Below, piece after piece: positions 8,910-63,612 of a stretch of 64,000 bases of DNA. The DNA is taken from positions 137,699,209-137,763,208 of the forward strand of contig NC_068982.1 in the NCBI RefSeq assembly GCF_001194135.2. The letters are read 5' to 3'. The notes under the pieces were generated by a model, which saw only the letters and a program-made list of their open reading frames with translations, made no database searches and was not told where the DNA came from. Source of the stretch: Octopus bimaculoides. Taxonomy: Eukaryota. The position numbers and the translations under genes are program-made. Position 1 is the stretch's first letter, and each line of letters opens with the position of its first letter.

Positions 8910-9100
8910 ATGCTCAGTCAAATCATACCATTTAGGCTGACTTTTGTGTTGATACTGTATATGAGGTTACTATTAGAGACTCATGCTGTTCCAACCATCT
9001 GCCAAACATGTACTTGCCGAGGATCTTCGATTAATATAACTTGTAAAAATCGAGGACTGATATCAGTCCCCCAGACCATTCCCCCAGATGTCGTATCTTT
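8910..9100 (+). CDS. First coding exon: signal peptide + LRRNT
   Basis: [63 protein letters not shown](L). Acceptor tttacag at 8889, so a 5'UTR exon lies upstream. Donor gtaagt at 9101, phase 2. Confidence 0.93.

Positions 9101-63612: not shown

What the first reader, a model, noticed from the sequence alone, without database searches (positions are those of the whole stretch)
8910..63612. Adhesion GPCR with an unusual ectodomain: 17 LRR + three-finger (Ly6/uPAR) + SEA-like + HormR + GAIN
Seen: 29 phase-compatible exons give about 995 aa without a stop. Known: vertebrate ADGRA has LRR-Ig-HormR-GAIN and ADGRG6 has CUB-PTX-SEA-HormR-GAIN. I know of no adhesion GPCR that couples a long LRR solenoid to a Ly6/uPAR module. 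Inference: a lineage-specific, exon-shuffled receptor class in which a recognition solenoid is tethered to a GAIN-activated 7TM.
Basis: partly seen in the sequence, partly recalled or inferred. Interest (0 to 1): 0.8.

Follow-up and report, generated by a model that had tools for sequence, protein, structure and literature searches.

The report
Octopus adhesion GPCR with LRR–three-finger ectodomain
The window holds the first 29 exons of a real, already annotated Octopus bimaculoides adhesion G-protein-coupled receptor; its outer part is 17 leucine-rich repeats, a Ly6/uPAR three-finger domain, a divergent SEA domain, a hormone-receptor domain and a GAIN domain, a layout shared by other molluscs but not yet described in the papers I could search.

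Summary
I rebuilt 29 AG/GT-bounded, phase-compatible exons on the + strand (8910-63612). They give 994 aa without a stop, or 997 aa with the RefSeq donor at 55097. This matches residues 1-997 of O. bimaculoides XP_052821851.1 (LOC106882527; UniProt A0A0L8FLR8; Ocbimv22014869m).

All assembly gaps are intronic. They could still hide extra, frame-neutral LRR exons.

Every domain call was tested:
- LRR: Pfam E 5e-94.
- Ly6/uPAR three-finger: family profile hits LYPD1 at E 1.5e-6, and all top 50 Foldseek hits to the AlphaFold model are three-finger folds.
- SEA: passes Pfam's threshold only in the abalone relative; the octopus copy is divergent.
- HormR: 26.4 bits against a threshold of 26.2.
- GAIN: E 4e-5 to the zebrafish ADGRG6 ectodomain.

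GPS, 7TM and a C-terminal Death domain lie beyond the window in the same gene.

The gene belongs to the published octopus-specific adhesion-GPCR expansion (Ritschard 2019, group 3) and is expressed mainly in skin and suckers. The LRR-LU-SEA-HormR-GAIN-7TM layout also occurs in gastropods and bivalves, all auto-named "ADGRG6-like". So this is a mollusc-wide ADGRG-like variant in which LRR-LU replaces CUB-PTX. It is not a new class. Interest is moderate.

The parts
8910..9100 (+). Exon 1: start codon, signal peptide, cysteine-rich LRR N-terminal cap (CQTCTC...C), start of first LRR
   Evidence: ORF and GTAAGT donor; identical to P0077 residues 1-64
18923..18994 (+). LRR exon 1 (72 nt, phase 2-2, class D)
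   Evidence: Pfam LRR_8
19921..19992 (+). LRR exon 2 (class W)
23300..23371 (+). LRR exon 3 (class D)
25965..26036 (+). LRR exon 4 (class S)
26420..26491 (+). LRR exon 5 (class Y)
27553..27624 (+). LRR exon 6 (class H)
28932..29000 (+). LRR exon 7 (69 nt, 23 residues, class W); 64 nt upstream of gap 29064-29418
   Evidence: nhmmer profile hit, sequence, present in P0077
30529..30600 (+). LRR exon 8 (class S)
31419..31490 (+). LRR exon 9 (class Y)
32441..32512 (+). LRR exon 10 (class H)
35215..35286 (+). LRR exon 11 (class W)
36847..36918 (+). LRR exon 12 (class S)
37258..37329 (+). LRR exon 13 (class Y)
38321..38392 (+). LRR exon 14 (class H)
40367..40438 (+). LRR exon 15 (class Y)
43154..43225 (+). 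LRR exon 16 (class S)
46141..46212 (+). LRR exon 17 (last repeat, conserved across paralogues: NNRIQxYEDGxFLFL)
47702..47856 (+). LRR C-terminal cap exon (..[16 protein letters not shown])
   Evidence: splice search; tblastn to homologues
49404..49495 (+). Ly6/uPAR (three-finger) domain, first half (Cys 1-4)
50300..50483 (+). Ly6/uPAR (three-finger) domain, second half (Cys 5-12, ..[11 protein letters not shown])
52150..52250 (+). SEA-like domain, exon 1 (first strand and loop)
53798..53850 (+). SEA-like domain, exon 2 (first helix end, second strand)
54937..55097 (+). SEA-like domain, exon 3; RefSeq donor at 55097, an alternative in-frame donor at 55088 drops Gly-Lys-Arg
57458..57572 (+). Hormone-receptor (HormR/HRM) domain, first half
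58699..58868 (+). HormR domain, second half, and start of GAIN subdomain A
61855..62086 (+). GAIN domain, helical subdomain A
62478..62649 (+). GAIN domain, end of subdomain A and start of subdomain B
63469..63612 (+). GAIN subdomain B exon; open donor GTATGG, the gene continues past the window end

Best explanation
Window positions 8910-63612 (+) encode the extracellular N-terminal two-thirds of one Octopus bimaculoides adhesion GPCR: LOC106882527, XP_052821851.1, 1535 aa.

Domain order: signal peptide, LRRNT, 17 LRRs (one exon each), LRRCT, one Ly6/uPAR three-finger domain with 12 cysteines, a divergent non-cleaving SEA domain, a HormR domain, and the first 200 or so residues of the GAIN domain. 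The rest of the gene lies downstream of the window. It holds the remainder of GAIN with the GPS site (CSCNHL/TSF), a family-B 7TM, a Ser/Gln-rich tail and a Death domain.

The SEA-HormR-GAIN-7TM core is of the ADGRG type and is closest to ADGRG2 and ADGRG6. The CUB-PTX head of ADGRG6 is replaced by LRR-LU.

Inferred mechanism, from established adhesion-GPCR biology and not shown here:
- The LRR solenoid and the LU domain bind an extracellular partner.
- The GAIN domain cleaves itself at HL|T and holds the tethered agonist.
- Ligand binding or force exposes that agonist and activates the 7TM.

The LRR array grew by tandem duplication of a four-exon cassette (classes W, S, Y, H). Every LRR exon has the same phase at both ends, so exon gain, loss or skipping keeps the frame.
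For: - Exon chain and identity to RefSeq P0077.
- LRR: Pfam LRR_8 E 5e-94.
- LU: all 12 Cys are conserved from octopus to abalone, scallop and mussel. The family profile against PDB gives LYPD1 at 1.5e-6, LYPD6 at 4e-4, then SLURP-1, candoxin, ACVR1, CD59 and TGFBR1, with no non-three-finger hit. AlphaFold pLDDT is 77.9. The Foldseek top 50 are all three-finger folds; Lynx2 has probability 1.00 and TM 0.60/0.64.
- SEA: the octopus LU+SEA profile aligns to abalone P0070 residues 237-428. The abalone segment scores 28.9 bits on Pfam SEA against a threshold of 26.4, Argonauta scores 21.2, and a further relative known only from transcript assemblies (P0058, species not identified) scores 17. The model is beta-alpha-beta-beta-alpha-beta with pLDDT 70-89. 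The top PDB profile hit is the ADGRF1 SEA fragment at E 0.18.
- HormR: 26.4 bits against a threshold of 26.2, and 14 of 14 relatives match. PDB profile hits are the PTH1R, PTH2R and CRFR2 ectodomains.
- GAIN: the window-only 203 aa hit zebrafish ADGRG6 6v55 at E 4e-5.
- The HormR-to-7TM stretch of P0077 hits ADGRG2 at 7e-52 and ADGRG6 at 1.6e-48.
- GPS 1.7e-13, 7tm_2 1.4e-23, Death 28.8 bits against a threshold of 22.6.
- Single transcript: relative P0058 (1155 aa, LRR to 7TM) sits on three independent 4.0-4.4 kb transcript-assembly contigs.
- Same layout in Haliotis, Nucella, Dreissena, Ylistrum and Argonauta.
- Cassette duplication: exons of the same class are 72-83% identical in nucleotides, against about 60-68% between classes. 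Flanking intron sequence is also shared.
- Published expression: tau 0.96, skin 0.71, sucker 0.17.
Against: - No cDNA of this gene was available. The 17-LRR isoform is a computational model (Gnomon and mine) built on the same gapped assembly.
- Two older models of the same locus start inside the LRR array (P0047, P0078).
- The closest O. vulgaris model (P0001) has no LRR part and a broken 7TM.
- The octopus SEA-like segment does not reach Pfam SEA on its own. Foldseek returned only generic ferredoxin-like folds for it, none with E below 1e-3.
- The Asn that follows the last Cys in LU domains is Ser in this gene.
- Ligand, cleavage and G-protein coupling are untested.
Confidence: 0.9

Rival explanations
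1. Two genes were merged by prediction: a secreted or membrane LRR(-LU) protein upstream, and a separate ADGRG-like receptor that starts at or after the LU domain.
For: - Several octopus models are LRR-LU fragments without a 7TM and carry names such as chaoptin, LRRC15-like or LINGO-like.
- The O. vulgaris model P0001 lacks the LRRs.
- Older models of this locus start within the LRR array.
Against: - The LRRCT exon (phase 2 in, phase 1 out) splices in frame into the LU exon.
- Full LRR-to-7TM proteins exist in three mollusc classes.
- P0058 carries LRR to 7TM on 4.0-4.4 kb transcript-assembly contigs that cannot hold introns.
- There is no in-frame start codon with a signal peptide at the LU exon.
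Confidence: 0.05
2. The receptor is real, but the 17 LRR exons are not all used together. Because they share the same phase, they act as cassette exons, and skipping produces receptors with solenoids of different length and surface.
For: - All 17 LRR exons are phase 2-2 with near-consensus splice sites.
- Paralogues carry from about 3 to more than 13 LRRs.
- The exons fall into repeated W-S-Y-H cassettes.
Against: - No transcript evidence either way was available here.
- The current RefSeq model includes all 17.
- Strong GTAAGT donors on every exon favour constitutive use.
Confidence: 0.25
3. It is an ADGRA (GPR124/GPR125)-type receptor, the vertebrate family that combines LRRs with HormR and GAIN.
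For: - It has an LRR head with N- and C-terminal caps, followed by HormR and GAIN.
- Precomputed weak hits to PF26588 (ADGRA2/3 GAIN) appear in several relatives.
- One paralogue is named ADGRA3 in RefSeq.
Against: - There is no Ig domain; LU and SEA sit in its place.
- The HormR-GAIN-7TM stretch hits ADGRG2, G6, G3 and G4 best, then ADGRL3, and no ADGRA chain appears among 34 PDB hits.
- The window's GAIN part hits ADGRG6 and ADGRG2 only.
- The C-terminus is a Death domain ending in KDIK. From my own knowledge, ADGRA2 and ADGRA3 end in a PDZ-binding motif; KDIK does not look like one.
Confidence: 0.05
4. The locus is a decaying paralogue (pseudogene) of an expanded family rather than a working receptor.
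For: - The family is large, and many members are fragmentary.
- The LU terminal Asn is lost, and the linker between the tethered agonist and TM1 is shorter than in paralogues.
- The closest O. vulgaris model has a truncated 7TM.
Against: - There are 1535 codons over about 93 kb without a stop or frame break.
- All 12 LU cysteines, the HormR cysteines and the GPS motif are intact.
- Published RNA-seq shows tissue-specific expression in skin and suckers.
Confidence: 0.05

Closest known systems
ADGRG6 (GPR126): CUB-PTX-SEA-HormR-GAIN-7TM
   Same: - Same order of SEA, HormR, GAIN/GPS and 7TM.
- The window's GAIN part hits the zebrafish ADGRG6 ectodomain structure 6v55 best (E 4e-5).
- The HormR-to-7TM stretch hits ADGRG2 and ADGRG6 at 7e-52 and 1.6e-48.
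- The SEA lacks the G/SVVV self-cleavage motif. That ADGRG6's SEA also lacks it is from my own knowledge, not tested here.
- All database names for this family are "ADGRG6-like" or "GPR126-like".
   Different: - There are no CUB and no pentraxin domains. Their place is taken by LRRNT, 17 LRRs, LRRCT and one LU domain.
- This gene adds a cytoplasmic Death domain.
- Orthology to ADGRG6, as opposed to ADGRG2 or the whole G clade, was not resolved.
Octopus-specific adhesion-GPCR expansion, "group 3" of Ritschard et al. 2019 (PMC6408891)
   Same: This gene is a listed member: Ocbimv22014869m, A0A0L8FLR8, Scaffold224076. The paper reports GPS, 7TM, LRR (in 5 of 22 members) and one Death domain, which belongs to this gene. 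It also reports positive selection and expression in axial nerve cord, suckers and skin.
   Different: - The paper does not describe the LU, SEA or HormR domains. A SUPERFAMILY "snake toxin-like" hit for one paralogue sits unremarked in its Table S3.
- It used a shorter model with fewer LRRs.
- It treats the group as octopus-specific. The domain layout itself is older and shared with gastropods and bivalves.
ADGRA2/ADGRA3 (GPR124/GPR125): LRR-Ig-HormR-GAIN-7TM
   Same: A capped LRR head sits in front of HormR and GAIN. Relatives show weak PF26588 hits.
   Different: - ADGRA receptors have about four LRRs, against 17 here (the ADGRA count is from my own knowledge).
- An Ig domain in ADGRA is replaced here by LU plus SEA.
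- The 7TM and GAIN are closer to ADGRG.
Ly6/uPAR (LU) proteins LYPD1/Lynx2 and LYPD6
   Same: - Same 12-cysteine spacing, including the extra disulphide pair and the CCxxxxC ending.
- Profile E 1.5e-6 to LYPD1.
- The predicted fold superposes on Lynx2 with TM 0.60/0.64.
   Different: - From my own knowledge, those proteins are small, GPI-anchored or secreted single-domain proteins. Here the LU is an internal module of a multidomain receptor.
- The terminal Asn is Ser in this gene.

Membership tests
Adhesion GPCR (class B2) | GAIN domain directly N-terminal to the 7TM | tested here: met
   The window-encoded 203 aa hit the ADGRG6 GAIN in 6v55 at E 4e-5. The remainder of GAIN lies outside the window in the same gene.
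Adhesion GPCR (class B2) | GPS motif with HL|T (or HL|S) cleavage site | tested here: met
   P0077 residues 1043-1086 score E 1.7e-13 on Pfam GPS, with sequence CSCNHLTSF. This lies outside the window, and cleavage itself is untested.
Adhesion GPCR (class B2) | Family-B (secretin-like) seven-transmembrane domain | tested here: met
   Pfam 7tm_2 E 1.4e-23 at residues 1094-1322 of P0077. The exons sit at window-equivalent positions of about 72-92 kb, outside the window.
ADGRG6 (GPR126) subfamily | N-terminal CUB and pentraxin domains | tested here: not met
   No CUB or PTX hit in Pfam for the model or for P0077. The N-terminus is LRRNT-LRR-LRRCT-LU.
ADGRG6 (GPR126) subfamily | SEA-HormR-GAIN-7TM core, with the 7TM closest to the ADGRG clade | tested here: met
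   SEA by transitive homology, HormR, GAIN. ADGRG2 and ADGRG6 are the best PDB matches. No phylogeny was made.
ADGRA (GPR124/125) subfamily | Ig domain between LRRCT and HormR | tested here: not met
   No Ig hit. That interval is LU plus SEA.
Ly6/uPAR (LU, three-finger) domain | Conserved cysteine framework (LxCxxC ... CCxxxxCN) forming the disulphide core | tested here: met
   All 12 Cys are conserved across mollusc relatives and aligned Cys-for-Cys with LYPD1. The final Asn is Ser in this gene but Asn in 16 of the 19 aligned sequences.
Ly6/uPAR (LU, three-finger) domain | Three-finger beta fold | tested here: met
   AlphaFold model pLDDT 77.9 and pTM 0.71. The Foldseek top 50 are all three-finger proteins, though no hit has E below 1e-3; the best is 5e-3 with probability 1.00.
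Ly6/uPAR (LU, three-finger) domain | Match to the curated Pfam model (UPAR_LY6 or related) | tested here: not met
   No Pfam hit for the isolated domain at E up to 0.1-1. Detection needed a family profile against PDB.
SEA domain | Match to Pfam SEA (PF01390) | tested here: inconclusive
   The window's own segment gives no hit. The homologous segment of abalone scores 28.9 bits against a threshold of 26.4, Argonauta 21.2, and P0058 17.
SEA domain | Alpha/beta sandwich, beta-alpha-beta-beta-alpha-beta | tested here: met
   A model of the closest relative has this order with pLDDT 70-89. Foldseek finds only generic ferredoxin-like folds, not SEA specifically.
SEA domain | G/SVVV autoproteolysis motif between strands 2 and 3 | tested here: not met
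   The motif is absent from all aligned members. Many SEA domains lack it, so it does not define membership.
Hormone receptor domain (HormR/HRM) | Match to Pfam HRM with the conserved Cys/Trp framework | tested here: met
   The isolated window domain scores 26.4 bits against a threshold of 26.2 (E 9e-6), and 14 of 14 relatives match. C3, W17, C30, C39, W67 and C75 are invariant. The margin over threshold is thin.

The most novel reading that the evidence does not exclude
This receptor is a hybrid sensor of octopus skin and suckers. A long, fast-evolving LRR solenoid plus a three-finger domain recognises external or microbial molecules. The signal leaves through two routes at once: the GAIN/7TM G-protein route, and a cytoplasmic Death domain that recruits death-domain adaptors. 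That would join pattern-recognition logic to an adhesion GPCR. Cassette duplication, and possibly skipping, of same-phase LRR exons would diversify what it recognises.
Probability: 0.15. Interest if true: 0.7.

Novelty: new variant of a known kind. Interest (0 to 1): 0.4.

Why it matters
Adhesion GPCRs are sorted and understood largely by their ectodomain modules. A three-finger Ly6/uPAR domain has not been listed among those modules in the literature I could search.

This work shows that molluscs keep an ADGRG6-like SEA-HormR-GAIN-7TM core and put a capped LRR solenoid plus an LU domain where vertebrates have CUB-PTX. This gives a natural example of head-swapping on a conserved activation core.

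It also gives a concrete domain map to the octopus-specific receptor expansion that is expressed in suckers, skin and the axial nerve cord. That makes ligand hunts and tethered-agonist assays more tractable.

The value is incremental. The gene and family are already annotated and published, and invertebrate adhesion GPCRs are known, from my own reading, for varied N-termini.

Tried and rejected
- A first regex for whole LRR motifs inside 72-nt exons failed, because the exon boundaries split the LxxLxLxxN motif. A motif anchored on NxIxxI...F found the exons.
- My first splice choice at 55088 differs from RefSeq's 55097. Both are in frame.
- The Pfam HRM hit (27.8 bits) came from a mis-spliced concatenation and vanished in the full model. 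Scanning the isolated, correctly spliced domain settled it.
I therefore first folded the O. vulgaris relative. Its LU half came out at pLDDT below 50, and the Foldseek result for the two-domain model was uninformative.
- The look-up of encoding contigs for P0001 returned no DNA because the gene range exceeds 100 kb.
- The search for homologous proteins with the mollusc-wide alignment A6 returned nothing, not even its own members. The search was wasted, so presence outside Mollusca remains untested.
- I took the chromosome-scale assembly to be an independent, gap-free check. It holds the same contigs and the same gaps, so I dropped that argument.
- Long ORFs on both strands elsewhere in the window gave no Pfam hit: 32936-33808 -, 6099-6617 -, 6730-7257 -, 61021-61497 -, 12854-13303 + and others.

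Full report
**Observation**

The window is AT-rich eukaryotic DNA (about 37% G+C) with 14 runs of N. On the + strand I found an ATG exon at 8910-9100. It encodes a signal peptide and a cysteine-rich LRR N-terminal cap.

Next come sixteen 72-nt exons. Each is preceded by a pyrimidine tract and AG and followed by GTAAGT-type donors, and each encodes one 24-residue leucine-rich repeat. An nhmmer profile of these exons with their flanks found a seventeenth copy at 28932-29000. It is 69 nt, in frame, and sits 64 nt before a gap.

All 17 start with the third base of a Leu codon and end with two bases (TT). They are therefore interchangeable in frame.

Eleven further exons were placed by tblastn with homologues and an exhaustive donor/acceptor search scored against those homologues. 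The chain is 29 exons, 2982 nt and 994 aa without a stop.

**Gaps**

Every gap inside the finding is intronic, and the nearest is 64 nt from an exon edge. The frame is carried by exon phases, so gap length is irrelevant to it.

Across the gaps in the 3' half, the exon junctions are contiguous in homologous proteins of other species. No exon is missing there.

In the LRR array, hidden 72-nt exons cannot be excluded. The chromosome-scale assembly is no help, because locus L001 (GCA_001194135.2, CM046602.1) is 100% identical to the window and has the same gaps.

**Identity of the gene**

A protein search with the non-LRR part returned 43 proteins, all from Octopus and mostly named "adhesion G-protein coupled receptor G6-like". 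They carry LRR, GPS and 7tm_2 domains.

A full HMMER search of 1.84 billion representative proteins with an LU+SEA-like profile found only 42 proteins. One of them, P0047, and its cluster mates P0077 and P0078 are models of this very locus. P0077 (XP_052821851.1, "uncharacterized protein LOC106882527", 1535 aa) equals my model residue for residue. The only difference is a donor 9 nt further downstream, at 55097, which adds Gly-Lys-Arg.

The protein continues beyond the window with the rest of GAIN, a GPS motif (CSCNHLTSF; Pfam E 1.7e-13) and 7tm_2 (1.4e-23). After that come a Ser/Gln-rich repeat and a Death domain (28.8 bits against a threshold of 22.6). Those exons lie at window-equivalent positions of about 64-102 kb.

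**Domain tests**

- LRR. Pfam LRR_8 E 5e-94.
- Three-finger (LU).
  - Pfam finds nothing.
  - An alignment of the module from octopus, Argonauta, abalone, dog whelk, zebra mussel and scallops keeps all 12 cysteines.
  - Its profile hits LYPD1 (6zss) at E 1.5e-6 with every cysteine aligned. It then hits LYPD6, SLURP-1, candoxin, ACVR1, CD59 and TGFBR1, and all 17 hits are three-finger proteins.
  - An AlphaFold model of the window's own domain (pLDDT 77.9) gives a Foldseek top 50 made only of three-finger folds. Lynx2 is first, with probability 1.00 and TM 0.60/0.64.
- SEA.
  - The octopus segment is below Pfam detection.
  - The octopus profile aligns across the abalone protein's residues 237-428.
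  - The isolated abalone segment passes Pfam SEA at 28.9 bits against a threshold of 26.4. Argonauta scores 21.2, and P0058, a relative known only from transcript assemblies, scores 17.
  - The model of the closest relative has the beta-alpha-beta-beta-alpha-beta order at pLDDT 70-89.
  - Foldseek gives only generic ferredoxin-like matches.
  - I call it a divergent SEA without the G/SVVV motif.
- HormR. The correctly spliced, isolated domain scores 26.4 bits against a threshold of 26.2, and all 14 relatives match. The Cys/Trp framework is invariant.
- GAIN. The window-only 203 aa hit the zebrafish ADGRG6 ectodomain structure at E 4e-5.

**Which subfamily**

The HormR-to-7TM stretch hits ADGRG2 (7e-52) and ADGRG6 (1.6e-48) best. 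ADGRG3, ADGRL3 and ADGRG4 follow, and no ADGRA chain appears.

The SEA-HormR-GAIN-7TM order is that of ADGRG6. There is no CUB, PTX or Ig domain. The family is therefore ADGRG-like with an LRR-LU head, and it is not an ADGRA.

**Distribution and prior knowledge**

Full-length proteins with LRR, the LU+SEA module, GPS and 7tm_2 exist in Haliotis, Nucella, Dreissena and Ylistrum; shorter models that carry the LU+SEA module come from Argonauta and Mizuhopecten. One relative, P0058 (1155 aa), sits on three 4.0-4.4 kb transcript-assembly contigs. This shows LRR to 7TM on one mRNA.

Ritschard et al. 2019 (PMC6408891) already list this gene in their octopus-specific adhesion-GPCR "group 3" (Ocbimv22014869m, A0A0L8FLR8, Scaffold224076). 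They give it GPS, 7TM, LRR and Death domains, tau 0.96, and expression mostly in skin (0.71) and sucker (0.17).

Their Table S3 even holds a SUPERFAMILY "snake toxin-like" hit for a paralogue. The text does not mention the LU, SEA or HormR domains. I found no paper that describes an LU domain in an adhesion GPCR.

**How the LRR array arose**

The 17 exons fall into classes by their first residues (D, W, S, Y, H). Exons of one class are 72-83% identical in nucleotides, against about 60-68% between classes. Flanking intron sequence is shared as well.

The order is D W / D / S Y H / W S Y H / W S Y H / Y S / N. This fits tandem duplication of a W-S-Y-H cassette. The copies differ by 17-28%, so they are old duplications and not assembly artefacts. 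Paralogues have from about 3 to more than 13 LRRs.

**Mechanism**

Shown here: the domain order and the intact GPS and 7TM.

Inferred from established adhesion-GPCR biology:
- The LRR and LU domains bind a partner.
- GAIN cleaves at HL|T and hides the tethered agonist (TSFTLL...).
- Binding or force exposes that agonist and activates the 7TM.

The Death domain suggests a second, adaptor-based output. This is speculation.

**Verdict**

Novelty is limited to an undescribed domain combination in an already annotated, published and mollusc-wide receptor family.

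Noticed in passing
beyond the window; L001:58000-95925 (window-equivalent about 64-102 kb): The same gene ends in a (QSTS)n low-complexity tail and a cytoplasmic Death domain (Pfam 28.8 bits against a threshold of 22.6). This is an unusual C-terminus for an adhesion GPCR. None of the other seven full-length relatives scanned had one, and Ritschard 2019 found a Death domain in a single O. bimaculoides sequence of group 3; their Table S3 assigns it to this gene.
   Followed up: partly
window 18923-46212: LRR exons form classes D, W, S, Y, H arranged as repeated W-S-Y-H cassettes. 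By spacing (D to W is 998 nt at 18923/19921), a W-class exon would be expected near 24298, which falls inside gap 24199-24336.
   Followed up: partly
window 55088/55097: Two in-frame GT donors lie 9 nt apart at the SEA-HormR boundary. The long form adds Gly-Lys-Arg (O. bimaculoides RefSeq). The O. vulgaris model uses the short form. This may be alternative splicing.
   Followed up: no
window 9600-10050, 46600-47070, 48370-48830, 59650-60130: An interspersed repeat of about 450 nt appears in several introns on the + strand. Copies are 77-88% identical to one another, and more copies lie downstream in L001.
   Followed up: partly
window 7810-8220, 34630-35040, 55210-55585: A second interspersed repeat of about 410 nt (80-90% identical). 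It includes copies in both orientations in L001.
   Followed up: no
window 16113-16334 (intron 1): The annotated N-terminus of the O. vulgaris relative P0001 (residues 1-78) matches this intronic stretch at 45-78% identity, with a stop inside. It is probably repeat-derived sequence wrongly taken as a first exon in that model, which lacks the LRR part.
   Followed up: no
window 56357-56713 and 62075-62386: Long trinucleotide microsatellites in introns give spurious open frames of poly-Ser, poly-Val or poly-Arg on both strands.
   Followed up: no
window 50459-50483: In this gene the LU domain ends CCTGKLCS. The Asn that follows the last Cys in 16 of the 19 aligned sequences, and in LU proteins generally, is Ser here.
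   Followed up: no
window 1-64000 = L001 offset -5909: The window is Octopus bimaculoides CM046602.1 (GCA_001194135.2) at about 137.70 Mb. The chromosome-scale assembly keeps the 2015 contigs and their gaps unchanged.
   Followed up: yes
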